This document shows positions 30,983-61,769 of a stretch of 64,000 nucleotides of DNA, one piece after another. Source of the stretch: Octopus sinensis (Eukaryota); NCBI RefSeq assembly GCF_006345805.1, contig NC_043013.1, positions 24,366,001 through 24,430,000 on the forward strand, written 5' to 3'. The position numbers and the translations under genes were made by a program. Below the pieces are notes generated by a model. That model did no database searches. It was not told where the DNA came from and saw only the letters and a list, made by a program, of their open reading frames with translations. Position 1 is the first letter of the stretch. The number at the start of each line of letters is the position of its first letter.

Positions 30983-30987
<5 letters not shown>

Positions 30988-42082: not shown

Positions 42083-42811
42083 CATGTATATATATGTTTC
42101 CATAAATACATACACATTTGAGTCTCTGTGTTTATTTCTATATGTGTGTGTGTGTGTTTAAATGAAAAGGCATATGGAATGAATTGATTCAAAGTTATAG
42201 TTTTCCCCATAATTGAGTGTAAATTGACTTTCTGTCAAATGTAAGGGCGTGTGATGTTAATTTTTTCAACCTGATTGTCTACGATAAATTGATGATAGTG
42301 TGATGAGCATGTGAAATAGTTTGATATGATTTTCTTTACATGCGAAGATATTTCTGCATAAAACGCTAATATTTTGCTTGTTTTGTAATTTTTCTCCGTA
42401 AAGAAATTGCACAGACAATTTTTGTTAATAAGTATTGTGTTTTATAAGGGCTGAATTTAATTAAACTAATCATTAACTTAAATCGTATTAACAACATTAA
42501 GTGAATGCTATATTTTATTTTTTAGGTGCACCAACAATAATGGACACGAACAGGAACCACATATCTGCTATGAAGTTGTTTTAATGGGCGCTACCATGAA
42601 ACTTCCTTCATAAGAGGAACACTCGTTTCTTGCTGATGTAAACAGTTGTGGCAATGATAGCATGAAGTGTCAACGTAGTCCAGGTAGAGAAAAATGATTT
42701 CGGCAATGAATTATAACAAAAAGAATTTTGATTAAACGCTTAAAATATGCAGATTTAATTTCCCTGAAATTGGCTTTGGATGTCTGAATGATTTACAGAT
42801 AACACATATCT

Positions 42812-43339
42812 ATGGCCGAGTTCAAAAGGATTATATGCTTCATTTTTCTTCTAATTACGCGAGTGGCGCTGGCGTCTTTAAGGCGCGATTTGCGAATTTT
42901 GGCTCGAATTCTTCCCGGAGAGTATAGCAACCTAAAACAGTACCACAATGACGCTTATTTGTCAAATGCTGTGCCCACGCGAGAACGACATATCTTCTTT
43001 TGGTCACGCTATACACCGATTAAACTGCCATCTTTGGACGAGGATACCACAAACTTTTATGTGGAACATTTTATGGACAAATCAATTAAACCATCTCAGC
43101 AAAAGATATACAGTTTCCTTCTTGATCCAGTTCAAAATTCTGTCCGAATGGAAGTTTATAAATTGGAAGGGATTGGTGACATCCGTAATTCACGTGCGGC
43201 AAGATTTCAGTTGCACAACATGACCAGCGCGGAACTCTATTCCAACAGAGAATGTGACATGTTTTGGAGACGATTAGGAATGCGAACTTTTGCGGCTGCT
43301 ACTGGACCACAGTGTGTTGCAAATATGAAAGGAGAAAAG
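42812..43339 (+). CDS. First coding exon (176 codons) of a predicted secreted CpcT/CpeT-family (T-type bilin lyase-like) beta-barrel protein; C-terminus in downstream exon(s)
   Basis: Clean non-repetitive ORF. Signal-peptide-like MAEFKRIICFIFLLITRVALA. Colinear CpcT/CpeT motifs: LRILARILPGEYSNLKQ (cf. L..LA..L.G.FSN..Q), RHIF, FYVEH..KPSQQKIY (cf. YxEQ...PYRQRVY), RMEVYKL, ECDMFWRR, and a second Cys (PQC). Phase-0 donor AAG|GTAAGG at 43339/43340. Acceptors at 42525 and 42798. Confidence 0.82.
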
Positions 43340-44131
43340 GTAAGGCACCTATTATTAAAAAAAAAACAAACAAACTATAAAGATGTATGAAACATTTAAC
43401 AAAGTGTAACCAGTCATATGCATTCTTACATGTATACATTCATACACACACACATAGATAAATATATTTTCATACACACGCATACATATACATACATGCA
43501 TACACACATGCATTCATACATGCATACAAGTATACATACATATGTATTGTATATTTGCGTATATATATTATATCTGTTTGTGTGTGTGTTTTCATGTGTG
43601 AGTATCAAGCGATCTGTATGTGTGAATGCCCATTCATGAATTATAGTTGTATTCCACGAGAGCTGTTCGATCAAAAGATAAACATCAACAAAGGAGTTAA
43701 TAACAAGAGTCTAAAACATTTGCGATACTAAAACATGAAATGTGAAAGAGATTAATATTGAAATATTAATAGATATTTAACAAAGTCATGATAATAATTA
43801 CTAATACTAATTAAAAAAAAGTCGCATTAAAAGCATGTAGCATATAATTATTTCACTCATTAAAAGTTCTCTTTCTGATAAGCACTGCTTTCCCCGTTTT
43901 CTTGTTTAAATATTGTATGAATCCTGTTATTTCGAATTGACTCTTAAATGAATGAAATTGGAACGAACAAGCTCACTCTATTATCCCTTATCTTTACCAT
44001 TAATCATTCTTAGATGATGCTAGAATTCAAAGAAGACAGTTTGATCTGTTGTTTACTTTTAGGCTAACTAATTTTTATCCGATCCGTTTTCTGAACTGAA
44101 TTATATTTTTCTGGTCAATCAAGTTATTTAA

Positions 44132-44528
44132 TCTTTATATATAAAAGTGAGGTTGTGTGCTGTCTGTCTCCTACGATTTAGATTCCTAACTACTCCCACA
44201 TTTTGCGGTGCAGTTTAACCAAAACCGGGTATCTTATAGTCGTGATTCATATCGAGCCCTTCTGGGTATTAGCGCGCGTCTACGATGAGTCTACGATTTA
44301 AAAAAAAATTTACCATCAATTTTTCCGATTTTTAATGCATTTTTGGCATATATAAGGGAAGTAACTCTCTAAAAATTTATTATTAAATCTCAGAACGTAA
44401 AAAGCTACAGTAACATCCCCTCCTTTGTAGTTAGCTATATTGAGATGGCTATTATACTTTACATCTCTAAAAATGCTTATATAGTTATTTCCCTTACAAA
44501 CCCGAGAAACGCCGGGCGATACTGCTAG
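44132..44528 (+). mobile_element. Non-autonomous Helitron in the intron of the CpcT-like gene
   Basis: A|TCTTTATATATAAAA 5' end; CCCG...CGGG hairpin (44501-44516) followed by CTAG|T 3' end; inserted at an A/T junction with no TSD. Confidence 0.85.
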
Positions 44529-45318
44529 TTTAATTATAATTAGTTACTCTTAAAGGATTTATTTTAACAAAGGGTATTTTAGAATTACAGTTACATTTTG
44601 AAATGAAATGAAATATTTGGACTATTCCTATGATCCATTCAAAATGCCATTGTCATACAGATGATATGAATATCTGAGAGCCATTTGTCTCGTTAGTTTT
44701 TACAGATCTATTTCTGCACTACCGCACTGTCGGGTGGGATTTGGTTGATACCAATTTGAATATGAGAACAATACTTTAAAAAAAATTTAAGTAGCTTAAA
44801 AAAATTCTTTTGAAAACCATGTTACAATGCTCGCTGTTGAGTTAGGATGATTTTAAATTTAAGAAACACGATTCTAGTTTGGGGAAAGAGGTAGAACCGA
44901 TTAGATATTTGTTCATTGATTATTTATTATTGCAATTCGAGAACAATAATGTCGTCAGTTACAGGTTGCCAACCGAAGAATCATTGGAGTATTATATCTC
45001 TGTCGCTGAGATTGTTAAGGGAGCGTCTGTAATTCGCTGCAGAACAAATAAACCGAGGAAATTCGTTCTTAAAGCATCGAGTTATATTATATCTGTGTGT
45101 GTGTGTGTGTCTTTTCTCTTGTATGACGTAATGCGATACGTTGTAAAGAAATACTTTATCTGTAGTGTACATTGGTTATGTGGTTCGAGTTCTCTTAGAT
45201 TTAGCTACTAAGCAGCATGGAAAAGGTAGGAACGTACTACAGCATCATATTTGATATAAATTTCGTGCTTATGTAGGAAGACACAACTTCTATAGTGCAA
45301 TAATTTGTTTTTCATTTA

Positions 45319-45550
45319 CGAGGGGTGTCGGAAAAGTCTTGAGCCTCAAAAAAACAAAACATTGTATAAGACTTCTGATGATTTATTTTTCACAGGAGTG
45401 GCTGTGTGGTAAGTAGCTTGTTTACCAACCACATGGTTCCGGGTTCAGTCCCACTGCGTGGCACCTTGGGCAAGTGTCTTCTGCTATAGCCCCGGGCCGA
45501 CCAAAGCCTTGTGAGTGGATTTGGTAGACGGAAACTGAAAGAAGCCCGTC

Positions 45551-45589
<39 letters not shown>

Positions 45590-47035
45590 TGTGTGTTTGT
45601 GCATCTGTGTTTGTCCCCCTAGCATTGCTTGACAACCGATGCTGGTGTGTTTATGTCCCCGTTACTTAGCGGTTCGGCAAAAGAGACCGATAGAATAAGT
45701 ACTGGGCTTACAAAAGAATAAGTCCCTGGTCGAGTTGCTCGATTAAAGGCGGTGCTCCAGCATGGCCGCAGTCAAATGACTGAAACAAGTAAAAGAGTAA
45801 AAGAGTAAAAGAGAGAGTCCCCTTTGATAGCTGAACCCTTTCTCCAGCGGTGCTGAAGTGCCTTTATCCCGGCGTAGAGGAACTCTTTTGTTTGAGACTC
45901 TAAGAAACTTCCTACAGTGTCTATGACGTCATTGTCAGTGGCAAAATAGCAACCAGCCAAGGGTTTTTTCATTTTTGGGAATAGATGAAAGTCAGAGGGG
46001 GCTAAGTCTGGCGAATAAGGCAGATGGGGAACAGGTTCGTATCCACAATCACGAATTGTTGCCATGGCAACCTCTGAGGTGTGGGCTGGAATATTGTCGT
46101 GATGAAAAAGGACTCCTCTGGTGAGCATTCCTGGTCTTTTTTCTTTGATTGCTTCCTAGAGGCATTACAGTAGCTGAGAATAATACAGCCCTGTCACGGT
46201 GTGACCCTTTTCAAGGTAATCGATCAGCAAGACACCTTGAGAATTCAAAAAAAAAAAACTGACGCCATGACCTTGCCAGCTGAAGGAATGACCTGGCCTT
46301 CTTTGGGGTAGGCGAAGATGTGTGCTTCCACTGCTTTGATTGTTCTTTGGTTTCAGGCTGGTAGTGATGAACCCAACTTTCGTCCATAGTAATAAAACGA
46401 GCAAGAAAATTCTCTTCATCGGCTTCAAACAGTTCCAGATTACTCGTGGACAAAGTGCACCTGGTGCGTTTCTGTTCAGGAGTCATAAGGTGAGGGACCC
46501 GCCTTGCAGAAACCTTTGAGAACCCAAGTTCTTTTGTGACAATGTTGTCTGCTCTTTCAAGTGAGATGCCCAGTCTCTCAGCTATCTGGCGACATGATAT
46601 TCGATGATCTTGCATTATCATACCAAGAGCAAGGTCAATGTTGTCCTCAGTGGTTGCAGTTGGAGGCCTCCCTGGTGTGGGATCATCTTCCACACTCTTC
46701 CTACCATGCTGGAATTCATTTATCCAGCGTTTGACTGTTGCATATGAAGGAGCATTGTCTGTTAAGTTTCTCACCATATCTTCATGGATTTCTGATGGAG
46801 TCATGCCTTTCAAATGAAGGTACTTTATGACAGCACGATACTCAGTTTTCTCCATTTTCCTTGTAACCTCGACACTTGCTTATTCAAAAATATGTAACAA
46901 AAAAAAAATTAAAATATCAAAATCATGAAAATGAACAAGAATACTCCGAAAAGACTGTACTTACCAGAAAAATTGTTCCAGCTACCTAGCAGCCCCGTTT
47001 CTAGGTTAGGCTCAAAACTTTTCATACACCCCTCG
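45319..47035 (-). mobile_element. Mariner transposon, full length, frameshifted, with nested SINE
   Basis: 28-bp TIRs CGAGGGGTGT..GAAAAGT.TTGAGCCT with TA flanks; MEKTEYRAVIKYL, TMDESWVHHY, HHDNIPAH, YSPDLAPSDFHLF. Confidence 0.95.
45393..45813 (+). mobile_element. Family-C SINE inserted in the last codons of the mariner transposase
   Basis: Same sequence as 20357-20800; splits the expected KGD|YVEK* C-terminus. Confidence 0.9.
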
Positions 47036-47639
47036 TATAATAAACCTTTTGTATAAAAGAAATGACAACCTTATTAAAGACAGCTTATTTCACCTCTAAC
47101 ACAACAGGCGATTTTAATTTATTATGCTAATCTATTTGATCATGACGTAGATCCAGTGCTGGTTCACAGAACAAAGTTTAAGAGAAGAGTAAAATCTTAA
47201 AAAAAGTAACTGTTCTACTGTTTCCAAATTCAGAAACTTGTGAACAAAAAACCACTGACTGTTTGAATAAAAAGAAGACAGAAAAATTGTTGTTGATATG
47301 TGATGCTTGTTATGTTTGGTCAGTCATATAGTAGACTAGTGTTTATCGTTGACTACAAACAGATGCTCACGTTCTAAGACTTATCTTTTAACAATCCTAC
47401 AGAGAATTTGTCTATTTTGCGTCGACAAGAAAACTTGTTCAAATTAGTAATATTCGAAATTACATACGCACACGCGCGCACGCACACACATATACACACA
47501 CACACACACACACTCACGTACAAACACAGTCACACACACATTCACACACACACACATATTTTCTAAAAACAGAGAAATAGTAAGTGCAATAGGTATATGT
47601 AGTATTGAATCACAAAACGGAGAACTTCGCGACTTCCAC

Positions 47640-49055
47640 AGCAGCAATAACTTCTTCAAATTTCTTCCAGTCACAGAGCACCTCGATTAAACTCCATCTT
47701 TTCACTCTAGATTTTCCTCCAGAAGGGGTCTATATCTTCTCGTGAAGGAGCTTCTGTGATGCTCACTGCTTCTCCTCTCATGTCTAGTTCCGGTTAAGTT
47801 CTTTGATTATTGTTTTTCTCTCGGTTATTCTCTTCTGATGTCGGAGTTTCTCACTGACAGCTTTTAGTTCCTGCATAAGGGAGATCAGCTTGCAAGTGTC
47901 CTCTTTTTGCTGTCTCCAAACATCATTTCTATCCCCTTCTTCACTTTCTGTTGGTGAGACGGATAGTGGTTTGCTTGTTTGGAAGCAATAATCATCATTA
48001 CACGGCTGATGGTCTTCAGTAAGTCAGCTATCCTTTTCTCTGTTGTTAAAACCCATGATGACACTTCCTTTGTTGCTTCGGTTTTATTTACTTTTTTAGT
48101 GTCCTTTGTGTATTGTTTTGCGGTAGTAGGCAAAGCTTATAGACAGGCGTTAATCTGCCAGAATGAGGGCTGATTACACTGCTGTAAAAACCCCTCTCTA
48201 ATTTCATTATCAGCTTTTAACACCGTGTCTATTAGTCTTTCCTTACTTTGGCAGAAAATACTCTCTCTTCGAGGAAGTACTTCAAAGCCAAAGTTACTTT
48301 CTCTAGAAAAATTTTACTTAGTGCATATTTCCCGGATATATCCTCCTGATTGCTTCTACAATGATCTTTAGAGGGACAATGGTCAGTTGCGTTAACCTGC
48401 AATGTAGCTTGGCTGGTAAGTAGTATAGAATATGTTGGAATGTTGTTAACTGTGAAATAACGTGGTGTTCTAACATCGTTCACTGTTTTGTTTATTTAGT
48501 TTGAGAGACGGTTAATTTCAGATCTTGATTTAACCTTAGTGACTGAAGTTACAGTCACCAACTTTCTTCCTATGTTCCACAAATTTTACTTGTTGACGTA
48601 ATTGTTTTACAGTAAAATGATTTTGTGCTAAGCGCAGATCGACCCAGTATGATTTCAGTCTATTCATATACTCAACAGAGCGGTTTTGTTTTACTCTCCT
48701 ATAACAGTTATATAACTCAGTCCTCTATTCATAACTCCAAGAAAAATGAGTTTTGTAATTACGAGTTCTCCATGAAAACAGCTAGAAAGATTCTGTTTAC
48801 CTGTTGAGCTGTTGTTTTCTGTTCGTCGGTTGTGTTGTTGTTGATGTCGCCCAGCCATGTTGCTTGTAGTAACTCTCTGCACGGTAAATTCTAGTTTCAG
48901 TCTAAAATCACTACGATATTGAATAAAAGGTTCCCTCAGTTAATTCATCTGAAGATTAACCAGTTATTTAACAGGGTTGATGGTGGTGGCTCCAAGTTGG
49001 AGATAAATTGTCTCCCTCGCCAAATATGCGACTTGTCGCTTCGAGTATGGTATGG
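47640..49055 (-). mobile_element. 5' part (UTR + N-terminal ORF) of an R4/Dong-clade element, 3'-truncated
   Basis: FSWSYE*RTELYNCYRR..YMNRLKSYW..FTVKQLRQQ, WQINACL, FWRKI*..FNRGAL: the N-terminal region typical of the clade. Confidence 0.65.
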
Positions 49056-49149
49056 TAGGGTATAGTATGTATGTATGTATGTATGTATGTATGTATGTAT
49101 GTATGTATGTATTTATGCATGTATGCATGCATGCATGCACGCACGTATT

Positions 49150-49970
49150 TATGTATGTCTCTTCTATTTTTTAATTATTATAAATCTTCCACTGAGGAGA
49201 GAGCCGGTTTCCAACAAAGATACAAGACTCCATCTTTGGAATGTAGTTAACACAGACAAACTTACATTTGGAACTTGAGAAAACTCTTGCATATTTTTAC
49301 TGTTCCACTCACAGATTGCATTTATAATGTACGAATCAGCCGGTCAGTTTCTGTTTCTTAAAATCTCAGTTTATCCAGATTCTCCTTTAAGCATTTACTA
49401 ACAAAACCTAGTGCTCCAATTATTATTGGTATGAATATGAATTCATAGTCTGGATATAGAAGCTGGAGGTTTCGAAGCAGTTGTCTATAGATATCCTCTT
49501 TTTTTTTTTTTTTTAAAGAGATATTTATATCTGCAGGGCAGCTAACCTCTATGATGCTACATACCTTTGCCCTTCTGTCCCAAACAACAATATCTGGCCT
49601 GTTATGCTTACATTTGACAGAAGTTTTGATGAGAATATTCCACCAGTATTCCTTGAGTTGGTGTTTATGAATGTATTCCATAACAGGGATTTTCTAAGTT
49701 TATTTCTGGACGGTCTTTTTTGCGGATAGCATTGTAAATTGTTTTAGCAACAACAACGTGCCGCAGAGGGAGGTAGTACCGTGACGACATTTTAGGACAG
49801 CTTCTAATCACATGCATGATGTCTTCCACAGAAACATGACATAGCCTACACATACAAGATTACAAGAGCGTCACTGTCTCTCTTGTTCACCAGGTACTTT
49901 GTGGCAATCTATGCAAACGCATAGCCTTCAAAGTGTGATAAGATGTAGTGGTCTTGTGTCTGTAAGTATG
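49150..49970 (-). mobile_element. R4/Dong-clade 3' fragment with (CATA)n tail
   Basis: SHFEGYAFA, CRLCHVSVEDIMHVIRSC, HNRPDIVVWD, IEVSCP, FIPIIIGALG; tail at 49065-49150. Confidence 0.9.
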
Positions 49971-51512
49971 TATGTTATATTTATTTTAAGCATATATAAT
50001 TAGAAATATTTTCTATATTAGCACAAACGTTGAGACAACTGATGGTATTATTAAAATGAAGCAGGAGTGAGACAAGTGATTTAATAGGGTTTGAATGCAA
50101 AATGTAGAAAGATAACAAGTAAATCATGACATTTAATTCAGTGCTTTATGACTTATGGCATGCACAGCACTTCGACATAATTGCCATAATGAAAGATGAG
50201 TATTATAGATGCAGAAATAAGTGTCTGTCAATGAAGACATTTCATGTCTATTTGACTATGTGTTTGGAAAAGGAATAAAAATTGGTCTTCTTGCCTGAAA
50301 AAGAGAGTCCTGATTCATGGAAAACATTCGATTTATTAGTAGAAGTTGTAAATTAATAACTTTAACGCACAAAGTTTATCTTGGTTATCTTTTCTCAATT
50401 CTTATCTATTTATATGTATTGAGCTTTTATGGTTTACATTTTCAAAATATTGCGTTTTTTCTTAAACCGAAGAAACAAGAATGATTCCATAAGTATCCAT
50501 ATGTTTTTCTTTTTTAGAAACTTCTGCTAAATAATTTGTAATGAGTTGTAGCTCTTTTCACTTCTAAGAGCTGGATTATTGGCAAGCAGGTTAGATTTAA
50601 TTGTTAGAACATAAACATTTGTAACGTGAACTATTTTTTATAAAACATCTTTCTGATTGTCTCATTGCTACTATCGAACACTAAGCAATTAGAAACATAG
50701 ACAGGCTCTATAAAATTAGAGATAGTATAATAATTATTATATTCTCGAGAGCGTCATTTTATTTTTTGGAGGGATTTTAAGTCAAGATTTTGTGTCTCAT
50801 TAACTGACTGGAAAACAAACAATTGAGAAACGTAAAAAGAAAATTCAAATTTAATTTATTTACGTTTTTCTTTTCTTTTTGGAAGGACACTAACACTACA
50901 ATCTATTTGTAGCGTTCTGTTTATCAATTCTTCGATTTCTAAAATTATGGAGAAAATAAAAATAACCTTCAAAAACTAAGTTAGGAATGAGACTGGTAGC
51001 TACCAAAACTGTAAGAATGTTTTTCATTATCATATTACAATAAAATAATTAAAGACCCCGTCGAAGTTGTTATAATTAATATAATACACACTTTCCTCTT
51101 AAGTTTACAATATTCTTGTATTCTCTTTCTCCAGTTTACATTCGAGTAAATCAGCCCATGAACACATTATCGAACCTAATGATATATTACACACTCTTTT
51201 CATCTCGTTTCCTTGATTTCATTGATTAAATATTTTAATGACCAAGAGGAGGTATTGTCTACGTTGAGTTACAAATATAATTACAGATAAACAACTATTG
51301 TTACTACACAACTCATGATACTTAGTTCCAGCTGTTCGTTAGCAGAAAATATTGGGCAATCTGCCTTCTCTTTTTGCAACACTCTCCTTATCAATAAAAT
51401 TTGTAAAATCAGTAGAAGCAAGTTGATAAATAACCTGTCTTCCACTTTCTGTTGTTATTAAACAATACAATATAGATGAATCATATATACATATATCCAG
51501 TTGACAAATATA

Positions 51513-51567
<55 letters not shown>

Positions 51568-51571
<4 letters not shown>

Positions 51572-53140
51572 GGCATCCGTCGATCTCGAGAGGCCATAGA
51601 TCTGCGCTCGAAGAATGGTGGTGCAGCGTCTGTTGTAGGTGTAGAAGTCCATACGGGAGTGGCAGTCACACACGCAGCGACTGTATTTGAAGGAACTCTC
51701 TGCCGTGCCACTTGTTTTTCTTTCCGCTGAGTGCGCTTTTTTTTTGTAGAGAGTTCTTGTTTTTCTTCCGCTCGTTTCATCCCCTTTCGCAGTATTTGTT
51801 TCCAGTGTGGGTGATCATTTGCAACCTCCTCCCATCTCATGTCGTCCAGATCAAGCGGCCTCATATGTCTCTTACAAACGCCCTTGGAACGAAGATGAGG
51901 TCGTTCTCGTGCTCTTGTACCGGTGGCCAATTCCCCATACCAGAAGTCTTTTCGAATCCTTCCGTCCAGCATGCAATGTATATGACGGAGCCAGCGCAAA
52001 CGACGCTGTTGGAGCTGGGTGAGTATGCTAGGTATCTTGGCTCAGTTGAGGACTTCGGTGTTGGAGATGTGGTTGGTCCACTTGACATCCTAGATGCGTC
52101 TCAAATTACGAGGGTGAAAGAGATTGAGACGCCGTAAAGTAGCGTACTAAGGACGCAGGCCTTGTAGACAGTAATCTCGGTGTCTGCAGCCAGTTTTTTT
52201 GTTTTCTCAGACCCTTTTTGTGAACTTGGCAAATGTGGGGTTCGCCTGCTGTCCGATTCGCCTGCTGTCCGATTCGCCTGCTGATCTCAGGATCGAGGGT
52301 GAGGTAATCGGCGATGGTAGAGTTGAGATAGGCGAATTGATTGACTACCTCCAGGTTGTAGCTGGTGATGGTAGGTGATGGATACTTGAAACTTTAGCCC
52401 AATACTTGGGTCTTCTTCAGACCGATAGTCAGGCTGAGTTTCCGACAGACCTTTGAAAATTTGTCCACGAGGTGTTATATTTGCTCTTCAGAGTGCGCTG
52501 TCAGTGTTGCGTCGTCCACGAATAGCTTTTCTCTGACAAGTACCTGACGCCCCTTGGATTTTGCTTTCAGTCTCGACAGACTAAACAATTTATGGTCTGA
52601 TTTGATTTGAAGGTAAACACCATTAGTTGATGTGCAAAATGCATGTTTAAACATGACTGCAAGGAAGATGCCAAACAGGGTGGGAGAAAGCACACAACCC
52701 TTCTTCACGTCGCTGCGTGTGTTAAATGCTTCCGGAAAAGAGCCGTCAAATTGTCCGCGTGAAATGATTGGATAATCTTGAGGAGTCTTGGATGACAGCC
52801 AGTCTTGGCAAGGGTTCTGAACAGGCCGTCTCTACTCACTAGGTCAAAAGCCTTTGTGAGGTCCATGAAGGTGATAAAAAGTTGCCTTTGCTCTCGGCGC
52901 TTCTGTAGCTGTTGGTGGTGGAGCGTTCTGATCCGAAACCGCACTGAAATTCGGGGTATACCCTCTCAGATAATTTCTGTAGTCTGTTTAGGGCCACACA
53001 AGCAAAGACCTTCCCAACGATACTTAACAGCATAATACCTTGGCAGTTATTACAGCCGCTTTTGTCCTCTTTGTTCTTGGGTGACAATGTTGCTGTCTCT
53101 CATGTCTTGCGGTACTGATCCCTCCTCCTAGCACTGACGC
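51568..53140 (-). mobile_element. RTE (BovB-like) LINE, 5' truncated, decayed
   Basis: GIMLLSIVGKVFA, QCGF, FMDLTKAFDLVSR, KKGCVLSPTLF, LFVDDA, RWLRHIHCMLDGRI, RARERPHLR; typical RTE 3' end GAGATCGACGGATGCC followed by (TA)n. Confidence 0.92.
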
Positions 53141-53715
53141 AGTAACTTCAGCAAGCGGCTAAGTAGAATTCTCCTTGCACATCTGATGATCTCTGCTGTC
53201 TTAAGCGGGTAAGGGTTTGATAAGCTGTATAACTAATAATGAGAGTTGCTTCTTTGGATGGCCGTTGGCTCTTCAGAGTTTATCCACCCTTTGACATTGT
53301 ATTTAATTCTGCAGGGTAATCAAATAGCAAGAAATGTACCCTCCTCAAAAGGCAAGCTCTGTGGGGTTGCCGGTTTAGTTGCCGACGGCCCTGGAACCTG
53401 TGAAAAGAAAACAAAAAACAAAAAAAGGAAGAGAGAGAGAGAAATATGGCGAGGTCCGTAAGCCAGTAATACAGAGATGAAATACAACAGACTTTAAGCA
53501 GAAGTTTTAGTTGCAGAAGCTAAGAGGCTTAAATAAACCGAAGGGCAGCGTGATAGATAATGCTGCTTATTACTAGGGTTGTTATTTTATTTCATTTTGG
53601 GCTGCTGCCTAAGGACAAAATCTTACGGCAAACGGCTATTCACACAAGCTGTTTGGCTTATCTGGTGGTGATTGGGGGTGAGCGTGATTGTTATGGGAAC
53701 GACGGGCGCAAGCTG

Positions 53716-53879
<164 letters not shown>

Positions 53880-54891
53880 GACTACCTACCTACCTACCCA
53901 CCCATATGCGCGTGAGTGAATGAGAGATAGAGTGTGTGTATGTACGTATTGCATGGTGTATCCTATCTTATTTCAACATATCTATTACAACGTAATTAAG
54001 CTAAACAGAACGATAATTTTGAAAACCTACCTGACACTGGTATTTAATATCAATGTTATTCAGATATTTTACTTCATGTCCTCATCATGAACAAAATTAT
54101 TGTTGAAGAGCAGACGACCAAATCGGTACTTCAAGCCGTTCAAAGTTCGCTTGCACTTTTCTGAGATCAAAAATACCTCGGCGCCTCCTTTGAAAGTTAT
54201 TTGAGTATCAGTAATATACGTACTTAAACAAATTACTTTATGTTCACTCAACACTATATTAAAACAAAATGTTTTAATAAATTATAGTTGTCCGAAATAA
54301 CTCTGTTTATGATAACTGTTTCACAGCTATGTTTTTGTAGAGCCGAGAACACACCGAACGGGAAACGAAATAGTCTCACTTATAAAATACACTTTAGTAT
54401 AGAGTGTAAGTAAATTGGTTTTAAATAGTGGTTTGCTATTCTATTCCTAAACTTCTTAGGACAGGTGTCGACTCAATTGTCAAGCATTAATTAGAATTTA
54501 ACGAGATCCTATGAAACTTTAGTTGAGTCAGCTAATGCCTCCGGAATATTTTCATAGTCTAGCAGAGCACACCTCAATGCTTTACCGACCTGGAGTTAGA
54601 AGAGGTCGAGTAGGAATATGAAGAAATATTATTATCCAAAACATGGCTCAAGCGAATCCAAATTCACAATTTTCAGTTATTTTACCAATAAAAGTTGTTG
54701 AATACTTCTGTCTCCCTCCCTTCCTCTTTCTCTATCTCTTACTCCGTATACCACCTCTCTATCCCCCCTCTCTTATAATGTTATTTTATGTTATTTCTGT
54801 AAAAAAATTCCTGTATTATGCAAGTAGAGAAAAATACAGTACAAGTATTTCAATTTTCGTTAACCTGTTTTATCTCTATCACCCCTTATCG

Positions 54892-54962
<71 letters not shown>

Positions 54963-55035
54963 ATCTATCTATCTATCTACCTACCTACCTACTACCTACC
55001 TACCTACCTACCTACTACCTACCTACCTACCTACC

Positions 55036-55094
<59 letters not shown>

Positions 55095-55442
55095 TTGTCT
55101 GTCTGTCTGTCTGTCTATTTGTATATGAATATATGTATCTATTATAACTAAATATATGTATATATTATATATGTATTGAATATATGTATATATAGTAACT
55201 GAAAAGATCGTAATTGCAGAACTCCGAGTTTCATACTTCCGATCATTCAGCTGGTAACTGGGGCCTGTTTTCTCTTGAACAACTTGTTGTTTGAATATAT
55301 TTCAGGCTGAAAGGTTAGAAACGTGTAACTCGGAGTTCTGGAATCACAAAGCTTTCATTCATAATGTATTAAAGAATTCTCTGCATTTACGTATAGAGTT
55401 CTGTAATTTATCGCTTCTTGTCGAATCTTTATATATATATAA

Positions 55443-55511
<69 letters not shown>

Positions 55512-55558
55512 GTGTGTGTGTGTGTGTGTATGTATTTATGTATATAGACGTACACCAG

Positions 55559-55621
55559 TATGTAATGCCATCAATCCAATTCTCTTTGAAGGATAACGTT
55601 CTCAATCTTGTTGGACGCCAG
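55559..55621 (+). CDS. Candidate internal exon (YVMPSIQFSLKDNVLNLVGRQ), possibly exon 2 of the CpcT-like gene
   Basis: Perfect donor CAG|GTAAGT at 55621/55622. AG acceptors at 55547 (phase 1) and 55558 (phase 0), both with weak pyrimidine tracts. The frame is open. Confidence 0.35.
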
Positions 55622-56644
55622 GTAAGTGTCTATTTACAAGTTGTGTGAGTTCTTGTCATATTCCCTCGTGGTATTTCAATCATTTTTTCCTTTCATTATA
55701 TTTTTGTTTTAACTTTTTACTCACAATATTATCAATTCACAAATACAAACGTAGAGATAGTATTTTTTAGTAAGTCTTGCTACAGTCTTATGTGTAGTGT
55801 TGTATGCTCTGTATTGTTTCCAACACCAAGTGGTTTTTATTTTATACACTACATAAGCGATGTTTCCTTTTCCCTGCATGTAATGTAAAGAATCGATGAC
55901 CTTCAACTCTTTACTTTTCGTTCTGTATCAAACACCTTTATAAGAACCATTCAAATATTATTATTGTGGTCGATATGCAACCGAAGTTTTACTGTCAAAT
56001 TTCTTTTTCATTTTCCCTATTTGTATTCTGATGTTTTATGAAGCTTTGTGTAACTTCTGATCAACGAGTGATTTCTATTTTTGTCTTGTAACTCAGTATT
56101 TTGTACGAAGTCTATTTTAAAGCATTCATATTTCCAGCAGTCACTAGAAATAGATATGTAATAAATATTTTAATTCTTCTTCTGATCTTAGCAGACAGAA
56201 ATGAACTGTATTTCTTCTGTGTTTCATAATTTCGCCAATAAAAACAAAAATCATTGCGCCAAAAACTTGCAGATTTAGCCTCTAGAATAATATGCTTTTC
56301 AGGAATGATTAGTTGTGGATGAAAATGGTGAGTGGAAATCAGAATCGGCGGAGCATCAGATAAAAATCCTTTGGCATTTGGTTATATCACCTTACTTTTC
56401 GAATTCAGCTATCTATCGACTTCAAAACTCCACGCTGGAAGATGGTATGATTTTGATATACTGAGCCTTCTGGCCTCTTCTCGTGGCACTTTTTCAGGTA
56501 ATGTCGATTTGATGGAAGAAGTAAGCTAATGTACGGCGCATACATTTGATCAGAATAAAAACCAATCGTTTGTGCAGGTCGTTCGGCAAAAGTTGAACAG
56601 TCATACATCGTTATCGACTGGAGAGTCCATTAAATGTGTATATA

Positions 56645-56686
<42 letters not shown>

Positions 56687-57004
56687 CCAACACCCACACT
56701 ACACACCACATCACCCCACCCCACACCAATCCAAACACTAGCACTGACCACTCCCCAGCACCCACACTAAATACCACCATCTGCACATCATCCATCACCA
56801 TCATCCGGACACCCACACACCATAGTCCACACACACACACTTAAACATTTTCACATGTACCTTCGTTTTGGGATCACCGATACTTTATTATCTCTCCTTC
56901 TTTCTACCTCTCCTGTCAAACCATTTTTTCTCAACCAGTCAACATGCTTCATCGCTAAATCCATACGTTTTTTATGTTCTCTCTCTGTTTATTTTCTCTT
57001 ATTC

Positions 57005-57040
57005 TTTTCTGCTGAAGAGCGTAGGCTCGAAACGTAAAAG
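57005..57040 (+). ncRNA. Hammerhead-like motif with core mutation (Penelope pLTR remnant)
   Basis: UUUU-CUGCUGA-A-GAGC(GUAG)GCUC-GAAAC-GUA-AAAG; the core A is replaced by C. Confidence 0.55.
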
Positions 57041-57129
57041 ACATTCCCGAGCGTCAAGCTAATACACCTATCTTCGTCCTTTGTTTTTCTGTAAATTATA
57101 TATATATATATATAACTTAGATATGTTTC

Positions 57130-57890
57130 GACCACCTGATAGGATTAACTAAATCCTTTTAAAGTCAAGTTTTGTGGTATCATGGTCTATTCGAGTAGGG
57201 AGTTCTTGCTGTGTGAGCTGTATCCAGGTACAGGTGGCTCATCTAGTATTCCTTGAAAAAAATTGTCCAGATTCCGTTTAAAGGTGATGGCATTCTTTTC
57301 ATCTTTTCGGGACAATGTTAAATAGTGCAGGGCCTGTTGAGGAAAAGAAATTGTATTAGTGTATTTATGTGTTGATATATTGAATTGGGGAGGAGACATA
57401 TGGCTCGTGGTCCTAGCTTTGGATGAATTCTGAAACTAATGCTAATGTTATATGGACAATGCTGGTGGTATATTCCCCACATCGTGCAAAAGATGTATCA
57501 CTCACGGCGGCGCTGAAGAGAATAAAGTTTCAATGCCTTAAGGCAGTCGCAACAATCGAGATCACTCTTGCCCTTAATTCTTTTAGTGAATGCCCTCTAG
57601 GGTGACTCAATTTTCGAAATGTTTTGTAGGGGAAGACCACAGGAGGCAGCAGTATTCGAGGTGTGGCCGTACAAAGGAGATGACACCTTGTTCTCTGCAC
57701 CGGAAGGTCTTTATGATTCAGGAGCTCATCCTACGAGCTATATCAACCTTATTGTTGATGTGGGCTCTCCAGCTGAGATTGTTGTCAGCAATTACTCCTA
57801 AGTCCCTGATATTATTAGATGCTGTGTGTGATTCCTCTGAAGGAAGAGAGTATGGCTGTTATAGCATAGTCTTTCTTTTATAATGCATCA
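57130..57890 (-). mobile_element. CR1/Jockey-type LINE 3' fragment, decayed
   Basis: DLGVIADNNLSWRAHINNKV, ISKIESP and FKRNLDNFFQGILDEP remnants. Confidence 0.7.
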
Positions 57891-57891
57891 G

Positions 57892-57966
<75 letters not shown>

Positions 57967-58284
57967 ATATCTATATATATATATGGCACAACGAAGTACC
58001 GATATTTACTGGAAAATAGCGAACGTAATAAATCCGACGCTAATGTATAGCTTCACCGCGTATGTACTAGCAAAAATGCGTGTGTGCAACAAACTTGAAA
58101 AAAAATTGTCTTACCTCCAGGGAGAACATCTGAAAGATGAAATACCTAGAAAGGGATAATGTGGGACCGGTTTCAGATTTCTCAAGATATGTCTGCACAC
58201 ATATACTTGATTTATCTTCATCAGCCAACATACACCTCGACAACATTTCAGATGTTGTCACATCAATGCCAATGACAAGTGTCC

Positions 58285-58595
58285 GCTACTATAGCCTCTG
58301 GTCGATCAAAGCCTTGTGAGTGGATTTGGTAGGCGGAAACTGAAAGAAGCCCGTCGTACATATGTATGTGTGTGTGTGTGTGTGTGTTTGTTCCGTGTTG
58401 GTCCCCTCCCCATCGCTTGGCAACTGATGCTGATGTGTTTACGTCCCCGTAATTTAGCTGTTCGGTAAAAGAAACCAGTAGAATAAGTACTAGGCTTACA
58501 AAGAATAAGTTCTGAGGTTGATTTGTTCGACTAAAGGCATTGCTCCAGCATAGCCTCAGTCAAATGACTGAAACAAATAAAAGAATAAAAGAATA
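58285..58595 (+). mobile_element. Family-C SINE, 5' truncated
   Basis: Body and tail match 20357-20800. Confidence 0.85.
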
Positions 58596-59767
58596 TTGAA
58601 CAGTTGAAGACGTTCATATACCGGAAATGGCTGAGGTGAAATAAGTTGCCTGTATTTTGACACATGTACTTGACTCTCAAAAACCTCAGTCACTGACTCT
58701 GCTGGATAAAACTCGATACCGAGTGTAGTGGTTGTTACTCTTTAACTTCTGGTGAGTCCTAATCGAGCAGACCTATGTTTAAGGTCCCATTCAGATCTAT
58801 GCCTAGGTAACATGTACTTTGGAATACACCCTATAAGTTCCTTCGTACAATAGTAGTTTATGAACTAAAGGAAATTTGATCGGGAGATCGTTTAGAGGCT
58901 CCCTTGTTGGGTAGCTTCTAATAGAAGTAGTAACACTGAAAACGGGACCTACGTTTCATTGGCGTGCAATATTGAGTTTAGTCTGAATTGCAGAGGGACT
59001 CACCAAGATGACCTGTCAGATACTTAATATAAATATGATGCCCTCAGATTTAACTCAACAACCCAATGGTTTATGGAATTCTTTTGAAAGTATATATACA
59101 TGTTTATTAGGTTTACAACCGGAAACCAGATTCCTGTGAACTGGTATCAATTTTCAATTTCCGGTTTGATTTTCCCTTCGTGAATATTACTAATATCCAT
59201 GAGAAAGACATAACCGTGACACCAATTCATTTCCTCGACTGCATAAACTTGGGCGTGTGATTATAAGAGAAATCTATTTTACCGATCATATACGGATGTT
59301 TAAGATTATGGTTTTCTCAAGTTAAGAACTAATACAATTAACTTTTTGTTGTTGTTGACAAAAAAAGGAAGCTTGTCAGAAATAGCAGTGAAACTTCAGT
59401 GCTCTAAAAGGGAACGTCTCATATTAATAAATTCAACTCTAACCTCTGATCTCAATGTACTGAAGACTGTTTCCTTTGCTTCATATCGAGCCAAATACTC
59501 TTGTGCAGAAATTCAGTATACTTTGTACTATTGATATATAACGGTAGTACGGATACATATATATATATATTAGTTTGCCACTTATTTACAGTGTTACATT
59601 ACATTACTAAGTGACGCATATTCACAGCTAAATGAAACTGTTTGAAAGCGAGGATTCTAGGAGATAGACAGAGGGAAATATTAGGGGCAACTTACGAACA
59701 GCAGAACCTGGTTACTGAAACAATTTTCAATCTGGTGTATGCAAGTGTATGCAGATGAACATATATA

Positions 59768-61046
59768 TCAGGTCATCCCATTAGATTTGTCCGAATTTTG
59801 AATAAAGACAACAAGTGATCAAATGTTATATTTAATTGAAATTTAATCATCAATGTACTTTCCCTGATTATCTATGACTTACTTCCATCTATTTACCAGC
59901 TTTTTAATCTCATCAATGTAAAACTCTTTTGGTTTCAATGCGAAGAACTCTGAAATGTCAGTTTCGACCTCCTCCTGGCTCGCGAAAGTTATGTCTCCTA
60001 ATGATTCTGTAAACTACGAAACAAATGGTAGTCTGAAGGAGCAAGGTCGGGAGAATAAGGTAGATGAGGAATTTTTTCCCAACAAGCTCTTCGATCTTCT
60101 GTGATGTGATCTTTGCAGTGTGGTGTCGCGCATTATCCTGATGAAACATCACTCCTTTTCGATTCACTAAAGCAGGTCTATTTTTCTTCAAAGCACGGTT
60201 CAAACACTCTAATTGCTGACAGTAGACTTGAGCATTGATTGTTGCATTAAGTCGTAACAATTCAAAGTGAATTACTCCTTTGCAATCCCACCAGATAGAG
60301 AGAAGAACCTTTTCCCCATGAAATTCCCTTCTCAGTTGAGGTTGAGCTTTTTCCCTTTTACCAAGCCACTGTTTACGACGTTTAACATTTCGATAGAAGA
60401 TCCATTTTTTGTCACCAGTCACAAATAAAGGGTGAAATAAGTTCGCGAGAATGGAGAGAAGAGCAGATGTCAACTCGGGATTTGCAGTTGCTTTCGGAAA
60501 ATTCATGAGGCACCCATTTTCCAAGTTTATGAATCTTTCCAAGTTGTTGAAGATGTCGATGAACAGTTGTATGGTTTGAACTAAGCTTTATTGCCAATTC
60601 TTCAACTGATAATGCAGGATTTTCTTCAAGTAATGTTTCAAGGAGCTTATCATCAAACTCAATTGGACGTCCTGTTCGATCTTCATCTTCAAGGCTGAAA
60701 TCTCTACTTCTGAATTTTGCAAACCATCTTCTGCAAATTCTTTCATTCAAGCATTCTTTCCCCATAAACTGAGTATATGTTTCGAGTCGCCTCGGCTGCA
60801 GTTTCCTTTTTTGTACTCATAAAGCATTATGTGCCTCAAATGCTCCTTGGATACTTCCATGTTAGAAAGGGTTTTAATCATAGAAATTTTAAGTCTATTA
60901 TTCTGTAAAATAATATTTAATTAGTTAAAATGTACACAAATGCATAAAAATAATTTTTAATTCCATTAAACATTCTAAAATACTATTAAATTTCATTCAA
61001 TTAAAAAAAAAGATAAAATCGGACAGAACTTATGGGATGACTTTGA
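59768..61046 (-). mobile_element. Mariner transposon, full length, frameshifted
   Basis: TIRs TCAGGTCATCCCAT..G.T.TGTCCGA with TA flanks; ATG at 60860; KWVPHE, VTGDKKWIFY, HQDNARHH. Confidence 0.95.
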
Positions 61047-61140
61047 TATATCAAATAACGAAGGCGACTATCCGCAATATAAACTCAAAAAGGTAAAATT
61101 CAGTTGTCAGCAATTGTGGCTGACGGTGCAGGGTACCATC

Positions 61141-61179
<39 letters not shown>

Positions 61180-61190
61180 TTAGATAGATA

Positions 61191-61597
61191 GGCGCAAGAG
61201 TGGCTGTATGGTAAGTAGCTTGTTTACCAACTACATGGTTCCGGGTTCAGTACCACTGCATGGCACCTTGAGCAAGTATCTTCTATAGCCTAAGGCCGAC
61301 CAAAGCCTTGCGAGTGGATTTGGTAGACGGAAACTGAAAGAATCCCGTCGTGTATATGTATATATACATATGTATGTGCGTATATGTTTGCGTGAATGTG
61401 TTTGTACCCCCAACATCGCTTGACAACCGATGCTGTTGTGTTTACGTCCCTGTAACTTAGCGGTTCGACAAAAGAGACCGATAGAATAAGTACTAGGCTT
61501 ACAAAGAATACATCCTGGGGTCGATGTGCTCGACTAAAGGCGTTGCTCCAGCATAGCCGCAGTCGAATGACTGAAACGAGACAAAGAATAAAAGAAT
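61191..61597 (+). mobile_element. Family-C SINE
   Basis: Full head, body and tail. Confidence 0.88.
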
Positions 61598-61769
61598 ATG
61601 TGTGTGTGTACATATAGAAAAAATAGAAGTTGAAAATGCCCTGAGAATAGTTGAAATTAGTTTTTATTATTATATTTAAAGATCTAACTGGTTTCATAGT
61701 TTACACTAATTTTCCAAAAAGTTCAAATAAGAAGACGTGGCTTATGTCGCAACTGTCTTGCTTCTGCTT

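What the first reader, a model, noticed from the sequence alone, without database searches (positions are those of the whole stretch)
42812..43339. Secreted CpcT/CpeT (phycobilin lyase-like) protein encoded by an intron-containing cephalopod gene
Seen: a signal-peptide-like N-terminus followed by colinear CpcT/CpeT motifs (GEYSNLKQ, H60, YVEH, C148, C168), one N-glycosylation sequon (N136-M-T), a GT donor, and host repeats on both sides, which argues against cyanobacterial contamination. Known: T-type lyases attach phycocyanobilin/phycoerythrobilin to phycobiliproteins and fold as bilin-binding beta-barrels; the plant homolog CRUMPLED LEAF is plastidial; animals have no phycobilisomes. The cyanobacterial PYRQR motif reads PSQQK here, so lyase chemistry is probably altered. 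Inference: this is a repurposed extracellular tetrapyrrole or small-hydrophobe carrier (pigment, biliverdin transport, light screening or chemosensory odorant binding), with the two Cys possibly forming a disulfide. It may derive from an old horizontal transfer or from patchy retention. I am not aware of a functional characterisation of animal members.
Basis: partly seen in the sequence, partly recalled or inferred. Interest (0 to 1): 0.75.

Follow-up and report, generated by a model that had tools for sequence, protein, structure and literature searches.

The report
Secreted CpcT-like octopus gene, first exon
The flagged stretch is the first exon of an annotated but unstudied octopus gene whose secreted protein joins a barrel resembling a cyanobacterial pigment-attaching enzyme to two further bacterial-type domains, a family found here only in molluscs and of unknown function.

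Summary
Window 42812-43339 (+) is a 176-codon ATG-to-GT-donor exon.

It is 100% identical to residues 1-176 of Octopus sinensis RefSeq "uncharacterized protein LOC115220992". Contamination is excluded. Exon 1 is under strong purifying selection (dN/dS 0.07 against Argonauta), and the same junction is spliced in cephalopod transcripts.

- Exon 1 holds the signal peptide and about three quarters of the barrel.
- A conserved 30-nt cassette microexon lies at 55592-55621.
- The rest, the last barrel strands, a basic disordered linker and two VirK-like domains, lies beyond the window.

An AlphaFold2 model superposes on Nostoc CpcT (TM 0.80) and on Legionella VirK/NttG (TM 0.84).

Every named eukaryotic relative is a mollusc. 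The nearest prokaryotic relatives are exported CpcT-like proteins of non-photosynthetic marine proteobacteria and Bacteroidota, not cyanobacterial lyases. The residues aligned to CpcT Tyr65/Arg66 are Ser/Gln in cephalopods.

Best reading: a secreted, non-lyase ligand-binding barrel in a mollusc-specific three-domain protein, probably of old bacterial origin. The ligand and the function were not tested.

The parts
42800..42802 (+). In-frame TAA stop 12 nt upstream of the start codon; it fixes ATG 42812 as the first possible start in this frame.
   Evidence: RefSeq protein P0068 starts with the same MAEFKR.
42812..43339 (+). Coding part of exon 1 (176 codons, ends in phase 0). It encodes the signal peptide plus about the first three quarters of a CpcT/CpeT-fold beta-barrel.
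   Evidence: ORF and translation. Pfam PF06206 E=2e-13. 176/176 identical to Octopus sinensis LOC115220992 isoform X2. dN/dS 0.07 against Argonauta.
42812..42874 (+). Predicted signal peptide M1-A21, with cleavage expected after A19-L20-A21.
   Evidence: Hydrophobicity scan and -3/-1 rule. Orthologues keep a hydrophobic but sequence-variable N-terminus followed by a conserved S-[LM]-[RK]-R-D-L-R-I-L. Inferred; SignalP not available.
43217..43225 (+). N136-M-T N-glycosylation sequon. It is kept as NMT, NIS or NIT in the four cephalopod orthologues.
43340..43345 (+). 5' splice donor GTAAGG of intron 1.
   Evidence: Sequence. The orthologous genomic contig L001 has CAG|GTAAGT at the same codon, and transcript L008 leaves the genomic sequence exactly there. 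P0068 continues with VRILVS after K176.
43340..55591 (+). Intron 1, 12.25 kb when the microexon is used. It is rich in microsatellites and holds a mariner-like transposase remnant at 45772-46855 (-) and a SINE-like repeat at 45439-45551.
55592..55621 (+). 30-nt cassette microexon encoding DNVLNLVGRQ (phase 0 to 0), with acceptor AG at 55590-55591 and donor GTAAGT at 55622-55627.
   Evidence: tblastn gives 100% amino-acid match to Argonauta P0002 residues 178-187. Sequence and splice sites. 29/30 nt identical, and 87% over 85 nt including flanks, to Argonauta L007 13023-13107. The equivalent DNLLNEIGRK is present in cephalopod transcript L012/P0069 and absent from P0068 and P0070.
55622..64000 (+). 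Next intron, running off the window. No further coding exon of the gene was detected before 64000.
   Evidence: tblastn of P0002 and P0068 against the window finds only exon 1 and the microexon. In Argonauta the next exon lies 16.5 kb after exon 1 and the VirK exons about 35 kb after it.

Best explanation
Shown:
- Window 42812-43339 is the first coding exon of Octopus sinensis gene LOC115220992, and 55592-55621 is a conserved alternative microexon of the same gene.
- The gene encodes a ~521-aa protein with, in order: an N-terminal signal peptide; a CpcT/CpeT-fold calyx beta-barrel (residues ~22-220, of which exon 1 supplies up to residue 176); a ~40-residue basic, disordered linker; and two VirK-like domains. 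Each of the three domains carries one invariant Cys pair.
- The family is conserved under purifying selection and is transcribed and spliced in cephalopods.
- It is present in cephalopods, gastropods and bivalves.
- Its nearest non-animal relatives are signal-peptide-bearing CpcT-like proteins of non-photosynthetic aquatic bacteria.

Inferred:
- The protein enters the secretory pathway, is disulfide-stabilised and N-glycosylated, and acts outside the cell.
- The barrel works as a non-catalytic binding pocket for a small hydrophobic or tetrapyrrole-like ligand, not as a phycobiliprotein lyase. The organism has no phycobiliprotein substrate. The residues aligned with CpcT Tyr65/Arg66/Arg68 are Ser/Gln/Lys in cephalopods. 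The whole clade it belongs to is exported in bacteria that have no phycobilisomes.
- The VirK-like pair supplies a second, unknown interaction surface.
- The basic linker (RGRR, RSRK) may be a convertase cleavage or polyanion-binding site.
- The microexon adds a 10-residue loop to one hairpin of the barrel and could tune that surface.
- The family most likely entered the mollusc stem lineage from bacteria and then acquired introns and its domain fusion.

The confidence given is for the whole statement. The identity, structure and architecture part is about 0.95; the small-ligand binding mechanism alone is about 0.4.
For: Identity:
- 176/176 identical to P0068, Octopus sinensis LOC115220992.
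- 84% identical to the Argonauta hians orthologue, whose gene spans 38 kb.

Family and fold:
- Pfam CpeT E=2e-13.
- A family profile hits Nostoc CpcT 4o4o at E=7e-15 over residues 5-202 of 207; hhalign probability is 97%.
- The AF2 model has pLDDT of about 90 over residues 1-220.
- Foldseek top hits are 4o4o and 4o4s, at E=2e-8, TM 0.78-0.80, rmsd 2.5-2.9 A. Cyanophage CpeT-like proteins give TM 0.74-0.79.

VirK domains:
- Pfam PF06903 matches in 8 of 8 full-length molluscan members; 5 reach the gathering score.
- Foldseek 5xta: E=7e-6, TM 0.84, rmsd 2.1 A.

Real, expressed gene:
- dN/dS is 0.07.
- Full-length spliced transcripts occur in five RNA-seq assemblies.
- The transcript/genome break falls exactly at the donor.
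- The microexon is conserved at 29/30 nt.

Secretion:
- Signal-peptide-like N-terminus and a conserved sequon.
- Invariant Cys pairs C149/C169, C285/C370 and C420/C499.

Not a lyase:
- S95/Q96/K98 stand in place of Y65/R66/R68.
- phmmer with the octopus exon alone does not reach CpcT in the PDB at E<=10, yet it finds exported bacterial CpcT-like proteins in a far larger library.

Distribution:
- Every named eukaryotic hit is a mollusc.
- The neighbour-joining tree gives one molluscan clade in 37 of 60 bootstraps.
- Bacterial relatives are Halieaceae, Luminiphilus, Rhodospirillaceae, Emcibacteraceae and Runella.

Microexon loop: the insert is a low-confidence loop between two strands, with the barrel otherwise intact.
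Against: - No ligand, cavity volume, localisation or tissue expression could be examined, so the carrier function is inference from fold and context.
- The importance of Tyr65/Arg66 for CpcT catalysis is recalled from Zhou et al. 2014 (J Biol Chem 289:26677), which could not be opened here.
- Other molluscan members keep P-[FY]-[RK]-Q-[RW], so cephalopods may differ functionally from the rest of the family.
- The signal peptide was not scored by a trained predictor.
- Mollusc-only distribution rests on named database entries. Unnamed Logan and ENA hits could come from other phyla, and bootstrap support for monophyly is only 62%.
- Bacterial gene neighbourhoods give no hint of tetrapyrrole chemistry: amine oxidase and glyoxalase genes in Emcibacteraceae, nothing telling in Runella.
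- The motif-based bacterial genome scan cannot find cyanobacterial CpcT by design, so it does not test relatedness independently.
Confidence: 0.55

Rival explanations
1. The barrel is not a small-molecule carrier. The protein acts through protein or glycan contacts, for example as a secreted immune, microbe-recognition, adhesive or chaperone-like factor. The CpcT-like and VirK-like domains would serve as interaction modules.
For: - Two of the three domains are VirK-like. The VirK homologue with a solved structure, NttG/lpg1832, is a type II-secreted protein of undefined activity (PMC6617341).
- The CpcT-aligned Tyr/Arg are lost in cephalopods.
- The long basic linker could bind polyanions.
- Bacterial neighbourhoods show no tetrapyrrole genes.
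Against: - The barrel is the best-conserved and most confidently modelled part, and it superposes on the ligand-bound CpcT structure 4o4s.
- Calyx barrels of this kind, such as CpcT and nitrobindin (3ia8, probability 0.97), typically enclose ligands.
- Nothing here points to any particular protein partner.
Confidence: 0.25
2. The product is a pro-protein. Convertases cut the basic linker (RGRR, RSRK) and release a free ~200-aa CpcT-like barrel and a separate VirK-VirK fragment, which then act independently. This can coexist with the best explanation.
For: - The linker at 222-263 has pLDDT below 50.
- It is rich in R/K in all molluscan members, with R-x-R-R motifs.
- Gastropods also have short, stand-alone secreted CpcT-like paralogues, in Aplysia, Elysia and Bradybaena.
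- The linker varies between isoforms and models by an 18-19-residue segment.
Against: - There is no proteomic evidence.
- Basic linkers are common without cleavage.
- The linker lies outside the window.
Confidence: 0.2
3. It is a working T-type bilin lyase that attaches a bilin covalently to some animal protein.
For: - Family membership and the fold match to CpcT.
- The Cys pair and the acidic residue near CpcT D163 are kept, as E in QEGWY, encoded outside the window.
Against: - Animals have no phycobiliproteins (established knowledge).
- Ser/Gln replace Tyr65/Arg66.
- The protein is routed to the secretory pathway.
- Its nearest relatives are in bacteria without phycobilisomes.
Confidence: 0.03
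4. It is an artefact: bacterial or cyanobacterial contamination of the assembly, or a decaying pseudogene fragment left by a transfer.
For: The domain is otherwise typical of bacteria, plastids and phages.
Against: - A canonical intron donor sits at a position shared with other cephalopods, and there is a conserved microexon.
- Host transposons and SINE-like repeats lie in the introns.
- The sequence is identical to a RefSeq gene model.
- Spliced transcripts exist.
- dN/dS is 0.07.
- Exon GC is about 32-33%, like its surroundings.
Confidence: 0.01

Closest known systems
Nostoc sp. PCC 7120 CpcT (All5339; PDB 4o4o, 4o4s), T-type phycobiliprotein lyase
   Same: - Same Pfam family.
- Same calyx beta-barrel: TM 0.78-0.80, rmsd 2.5-2.9 A over about 200 columns.
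- Same Cys pair (C116/C137 = C148/C168).
- Shared N-terminal x-[FY]-x-N-x-x-Q helix motif.

   Different: - Only 16-17% identical.
- The octopus protein has a signal peptide, an N-glycosylation sequon, introns and two extra VirK-like domains.
- P-Y65-R66-L-R68 reads P-S-Q-Q-K.
- The host has no phycobiliprotein substrate.
Exported CpcT-like proteins of non-photosynthetic bacteria (annotated 'chromophore lyase CpcT/CpeT' in Runella, Emcibacteraceae, Halieaceae/Luminiphilus, Rhodospirillaceae), function unknown
   Same: - Nearest non-animal relatives by sequence, at 24-30% identity.
- They share the RH, C-D-[MVI]-F-W-[RQ]-[RK] and Cys-pair signature.
- They have N-terminal export signals.

   Different: - They carry a different, un-annotated ~110-130-aa C-terminal domain instead of VirK domains.
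- They have no introns.
- They mostly keep P-Y-R-x-R.
Arabidopsis CRUMPLED LEAF (CRL; PDB 6lix), plastid outer-envelope CpcT homologue
   Same: It is another eukaryotic CpcT-family member that has been recruited away from phycobiliprotein maturation.
   Different: - It is only weakly related to the molluscan profile (E=0.0036, partial).
- It is plastid-associated rather than secreted.
- It has no VirK domains.
- It descends from the cyanobacterial endosymbiont rather than from the exported bacterial clade.
VirK family (PF06903), e.g. Legionella NttG/lpg1832 (PDB 5xta)
   Same: The two C-terminal domains of the full-length protein match it by Pfam and by fold (TM 0.84, rmsd 2.1 A). Like NttG, they sit in a secreted protein.
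   Different: - These domains are encoded outside the window.
- Here they are duplicated and fused to a CpcT-like barrel.
- The activity of VirK proteins is itself undefined (PMC6617341).
Animal extracellular calycins that bind bilins or haem (lipocalin-type bilin-binding proteins, nitrobindin)
   Same: The proposed mode of action is the same: a secreted or soluble beta-barrel enclosing a tetrapyrrole or hydrophobic ligand. Nitrobindin 3ia8 is a weak structural neighbour (probability 0.97, TM 0.49).
   Different: There is no sequence relationship, and the strand number and topology differ. This is a functional analogy only, from general knowledge, and was not tested.

Membership tests
CpcT/CpeT family (Pfam PF06206) | Score above the Pfam gathering threshold | tested here: met
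   51.1 bits against a cut-off of 21, E=2e-13, for exon 1 alone. 48.6-77.5 bits in five of the eight full-length molluscan members, 25-42 bits in the other three, all above the cut-off of 21.
CpcT/CpeT family (Pfam PF06206) | Calyx-shaped beta-barrel fold as in CpcT crystal structures | tested here: met
   AF2 model with pLDDT of about 90 in the domain. Foldseek 4o4o_A: E=1.8e-8, TM 0.80, rmsd 2.5 A; repeated with a second model. These are predicted structures, not experimental ones.
CpcT/CpeT family (Pfam PF06206) | Conserved Cys pair (CpcT C116/C137) | tested here: met
   C148/C168 are invariant in 38 aligned sequences and align to C116/C137.
CpcT/CpeT family (Pfam PF06206) | Complete domain present at the flagged coordinates | tested here: not met
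   Exon 1 covers profile positions 2-139 of 181. The remaining strands (VRILVS...QEGWY...PYKL) are in a later exon not found in the window.
T-type phycobiliprotein lyase (functional class) | Pocket residues Tyr65/Arg66 of the P-Y-R motif (their catalytic importance is recalled from Zhou et al. 2014 and was not re-read here) | tested here: not met
   They align to S95/Q96, and R68 to K98, in octopus. The same holds in Argonauta (PAQQK) and the other cephalopods (PSQQK).
T-type phycobiliprotein lyase (functional class) | Same compartment as the phycobiliprotein substrate (cytoplasm or plastid); no export signal | tested here: not met
   Signal-peptide-like N-terminus, a conserved sequon, and Cys pairs in every domain. 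This is a heuristic assessment, not SignalP.
T-type phycobiliprotein lyase (functional class) | Phycobiliprotein beta-subunit substrate and a phycobilin supply in the organism | not testable with these tools
   Only a 64-kb window is available. By established knowledge animals lack phycobiliproteins.
T-type phycobiliprotein lyase (functional class) | Bilin binding and transfer activity | not testable with these tools
   Needs recombinant protein.
VirK family (Pfam PF06903), for the whole gene product | Pfam match and VirK fold | tested here: met
   Pfam PF06903 hits in P0002 and the other full-length molluscan members. Foldseek 5xta_A: E=7.4e-6, TM 0.84. These domains are encoded outside the window.

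The most novel reading that the evidence does not exclude
Molluscs acquired an exported CpcT-like barrel from marine bacteria before cephalopods, gastropods and bivalves diverged. They fused it to two VirK-like domains and use it as an extracellular bilin- or porphyrin-binding protein. It would then be a previously unrecognised animal tetrapyrrole-handling system, possibly linked to the bilin and porphyrin pigments known from mollusc shells and tissues, with cephalopods having remodelled the pocket (PSQQK).
Probability: 0.15. Interest if true: 0.75.

Novelty: new variant of a known kind. Interest (0 to 1): 0.55.

Why it matters
CpcT/CpeT proteins are known as enzymes that attach bilins to light-harvesting proteins in cyanobacteria, red algae and cyanophages. 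CRL is a repurposed plastid relative.

A conserved, secreted, intron-bearing animal family built from this barrel plus two VirK-like domains has, as far as the searched literature shows, not been described. It shows that the fold has a life outside photosynthesis, as do the many exported bacterial homologues that are mislabelled "chromophore lyase".

If the barrel binds a tetrapyrrole or another chromophore, this would give a handle on pigment or haem-breakdown handling in molluscs. If the origin is bacterial, it is a clean example of an old transfer followed by domain fusion and intron gain.

On the practical side, the gene is short, the family is well sampled, and the barrel should be easy to express, so the question can be tested directly.

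Tried and rejected
- Single-sequence phmmer of exon 1 against PDB sequences found no CpcT, only a chance hit to a designed helical protein. A family profile was needed.
- NCBIfam gave no match.
- Rfam found no RNA family anywhere in the window.
- The word-indexed protein search with exon 1 returned a single hit. The same search with a 9-sequence alignment timed out.
- tblastn for downstream exons in the window found only the microexon. The VirK exons are not in the window.
- The look-up of encoding contigs could not locate the O. sinensis gene record, so the full exon map comes from Argonauta.
- The CpcT and phage CpeT structure papers could not be opened. Statements about catalytic residues are therefore from memory.
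- Literature searches returned nothing relevant. These covered "chromophore lyase" with "mollus", PF06206, the LOC identifier and the RNA-seq run accessions. Two broader queries were swamped by unrelated papers.
- The first attempt at a bacterial genome scan failed because the alignment had no conserved stretch.
- Bacterial gene neighbourhoods gave no functional clue.
- ORFs in the GC-rich patch at 62.2-63.0 kb, and several other ORFs, match no family.
- Contamination and pseudogene readings were considered and rejected; see the rival explanations.
Full report
**1. What is at the coordinates**

Window 42812-43339 (+) is an open reading frame. It starts at an ATG preceded by an in-frame TAA at 42800 and runs 176 codons to AAG|GTAAGG, a canonical donor at 43340.

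- GEYSNLKQ at residue 36, H60, YVEH at 83, PSQQK at 94.
- A single sequon, N136-M-T.
- Cysteines 148 and 168, plus C9 in the leader.

The N-terminus has the layout of a signal peptide: K5-R6, a hydrophobic run I7-I15, then A19-L20-A21|S22. It was judged by hydropathy and the -3/-1 rule only.

The translation matches Pfam PF06206 (CpeT/CpcT) at E=2e-13, 51 bits against a cut-off of 21. The match covers only profile positions 2-139 of 181.

**2. Which gene it is**

An exhaustive HMMER search found 61 relatives. The best is a 515-aa protein, 84% identical, which is Argonauta hians "uncharacterized protein LOC115220992 isoform X2".

A follow-up search returned the Octopus sinensis RefSeq protein of the same name (P0068, 521 aa). 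Its first 176 residues are identical to the window translation. The window is therefore O. sinensis, or a near-identical octopus, and the gene is already annotated but uncharacterised.

After K176, P0068 continues with VRILVSIVLTPTYINAQEGWY... This sequence is not found anywhere in the window.

In Argonauta the gene spans 38 kb. The next constitutive exon lies 16.5 kb after exon 1, and the remaining exons about 35 kb after it. The window, which ends 20.7 kb after exon 1, simply stops inside an intron.

**3. A second coding piece inside the window**

tblastn with the Argonauta protein found a perfect 10-residue match, DNVLNLVGRQ, at 55592-55621.
- It is flanked by an AG acceptor and a GTAAGT donor, and it is phase 0 to 0.
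- At the DNA level it is 29/30 identical to Argonauta. The conserved block extends over both splice sites, with 87% identity over 85 nt.
- Apart from exon 1 and one upstream block, it is the only non-repeat conservation between the two loci.
- The equivalent segment, DNLLNEIGRK, is present in one assembled cephalopod transcript (L012/P0069). It is absent from others (P0070) and from O. sinensis isoform X2.

It is therefore a conserved cassette microexon.

In an AlphaFold2 model of the microexon-containing Argonauta isoform, the insert is a low-confidence loop between two barrel strands, and the barrel is otherwise intact.

**4. It is a live host gene, not contamination**

- A genomic contig of another cephalopod (L001, protein 71% identical) has CAG|GTAAGT at the same codon.
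- A 2.9-kb transcript contig from the same species matches that genomic contig at 99.3% up to exactly that point. It then continues into the next exon.
- Full-length spliced ORFs occur in five RNA-seq assemblies.
- Exon 1 has dN/dS = 0.07 against Argonauta, with dS about 1.5.
- The introns hold host elements: a Mos1/mariner-like transposase remnant (45772-46855, minus strand), a ~113-nt SINE-like repeat that is multicopy in the Argonauta locus, and many microsatellites.
- The GC content of the exon region (32-33%) matches its surroundings.

**5. Architecture and fold of the product**

All eight full-length molluscan relatives that were scanned carry CpeT followed by VirK (PF06903) matches. Their alignment shows three invariant Cys pairs, one per domain.

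| Test | Result |
|---|---|
| Family profile against PDB sequences | Nostoc CpcT 4o4o, E=7e-15, nearly full length; plant CRL weak (E=0.0036) |
| hhalign, family profile against CpcT | 97% probability |
| AF2 model of P0068 | pLDDT about 90 over residues 1-220; disordered linker at 222-263 |
| Foldseek, P0068 model | 4o4o_A: E=1.8e-8, TM 0.80, rmsd 2.5 A; ligand-bound 4o4s similar |
| AF2 model of Argonauta protein | mean pLDDT 85.6 |
| Foldseek, Argonauta model | CpcT TM 0.78; Legionella VirK/NttG 5xta E=7e-6, TM 0.84, rmsd 2.1 A |
| Foldseek, viral library | cyanophage CpeT-like proteins, TM 0.74-0.79 |

The product is thus a signal peptide, a CpcT-like barrel, a basic linker, and two VirK-like domains.

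**6. Relation to true lyases**

In the alignments, P64-Y65-R66-L67-R68 of CpcT corresponds to P94-S95-Q96-Q97-K98 in octopus.
- All four cephalopod sequences have PSQQK or PAQQK.
- Most other molluscan members keep P-[FY]-[RK]-Q-[RW].
- C148/C168 align with C116/C137 and are invariant in 38 sequences.
- H60 is invariant in the subfamily but aligns with Tyr31 of CpcT.

The catalytic weight of Tyr65/Arg66 is my recollection of Zhou et al. 2014. The paper could not be read here.

The octopus sequence alone does not detect CpcT in the PDB. It does detect, in a library about ten thousand times larger, many 320-350-aa bacterial proteins with export signals. The named ones come from Runella and Emcibacteraceae/Kordiimonadaceae.

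A motif-anchored scan of bacterial genomes found relatives in Halieaceae, Luminiphilus, Rhodospirillaceae and Caulobacterales. That scan is biased by its pattern. These bacteria are not phycobilisome-bearing. Their proteins carry a different C-terminal domain with no VirK match. Their neighbourhoods show no bilin or haem genes.

**7. Distribution**

Every eukaryotic relative that carries a name is molluscan:
- Cephalopods: Octopus, Argonauta.
- Gastropods: Aplysia, Physella, Haliotis, Batillaria, Babylonia, Nucella, Gigantopelta, Littorina, Elysia, Bradybaena.
- Bivalves: Pinctada, Mytilus, Sinanodonta, Potamilus.

Gastropods also have short, barrel-only secreted paralogues.

A neighbour-joining tree of the barrel domain, rooted on Nostoc CpcT, puts all of these in one clade apart from the bacterial exported proteins. 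Bootstrap support is modest, 37 of 60. Cephalopods are monophyletic in 60 of 60. Unnamed Logan and ENA hits could in principle come from other phyla.

**8. Mechanism**

Shown: gene identity, exon structure, fold, architecture, selection, transcription and distribution.

Inferred:
- The protein is secreted, glycosylated and disulfide-stabilised.
- Its barrel is a binding pocket rather than a lyase. The reasons are the absence of a substrate in animals, the remodelled P-Y-R motif, the export signal, and its membership of an exported non-photosynthetic clade.
- The VirK-like pair provides a second interaction surface of unknown specificity. VirK/NttG activity is itself undefined (PMC6617341).
- The basic linker may be cleaved by convertases or may bind polyanions.
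- The microexon modulates one barrel loop.

I put about 0.4 on the small-ligand carrier reading, about 0.25 on a protein- or glycan-interaction role, and about 0.03 on retained lyase chemistry. Artefact is essentially excluded.

**9. Novelty**

No paper in the searchable library mentions a chromophore lyase homologue in molluscs, PF06206, or this gene. The gene model and its Pfam hits already sit in public databases, so the sequence itself is not new.

What appears undescribed is the family: a mollusc-wide, secreted CpcT-VirK-VirK protein related to exported bacterial CpcT-like proteins. I rate it a new variant of a known kind. Its interest is moderate because the function remains open and no experiment could be done here.

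Noticed in passing
window 55592-55621 (+): Conserved 30-nt cassette microexon (DNVLNLVGRQ) of the same gene, 12.25 kb downstream of exon 1. It has canonical splice sites, is 29/30 nt identical to Argonauta, and has an equivalent segment in one cephalopod transcript.
   Followed up: yes
window 24397-25223 (+), 31623-31916 (+), 45772-46855 (-), 59958-60765 (-): Four broken Mos1/mariner-like transposase remnants (Pfam Transposase_1 and HTH_48 matches). Two of them lie inside introns of the CpcT-like gene.
   Followed up: partly
window 27879-29544 (-): Frameshifted reverse-transcriptase ORFs (RVT_1) of a LINE-like retroelement.
   Followed up: partly
window 20407-20519, 45439-45551, 61241-61350; L007 at eight or more sites: A ~113-nt interspersed, SINE-like repeat shared at 80-87% identity between the octopus window and the Argonauta locus.
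   Followed up: no
window 41853-41983 vs L007 8527-8661: Single-copy conserved non-coding block (74% over ~135 nt), about 0.85 kb upstream of the start codon. It could be a promoter element or a 5' UTR exon.
   Followed up: no
window 62000-62999: Patch with 53% GC and strong C excess (GC skew -0.46) in an otherwise 30-40% GC region. ORFs on both strands match no Pfam family.
   Followed up: partly
window 53716-53902 and 54887-55118; also 21785-22944, 26316-27463, 30418-31095: Very long tetranucleotide arrays, (ATCT)41 and (TATC)59, lie just upstream of the microexon. Kilobase-scale TA/TACA-rich tracts give spurious YIYIYI ORFs.
   Followed up: no
L013-L015 (Emcibacteraceae-like metagenome contigs), genes at 2723-6972: The exported bacterial CpcT-like gene directly follows GntR-regulator, amine-oxidase and glyoxalase/dioxygenase-family genes on the same strand. 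This may be an operon, and it has no bilin or haem genes.
   Followed up: no
P0068 residues 222-263 (outside the window): Basic, disordered linker with RGRR and RSRK motifs. An 18-19-residue segment of it is present in some cephalopod isoforms or models and absent in others.
   Followed up: partly
P0023, P0027, P0029, P0062 (gastropods): A second class of short (~250-aa, or with a long Ser/Thr/Pro-rich N-terminal extension) secreted CpcT-only paralogues in Aplysia, Elysia and Bradybaena.
   Followed up: partly
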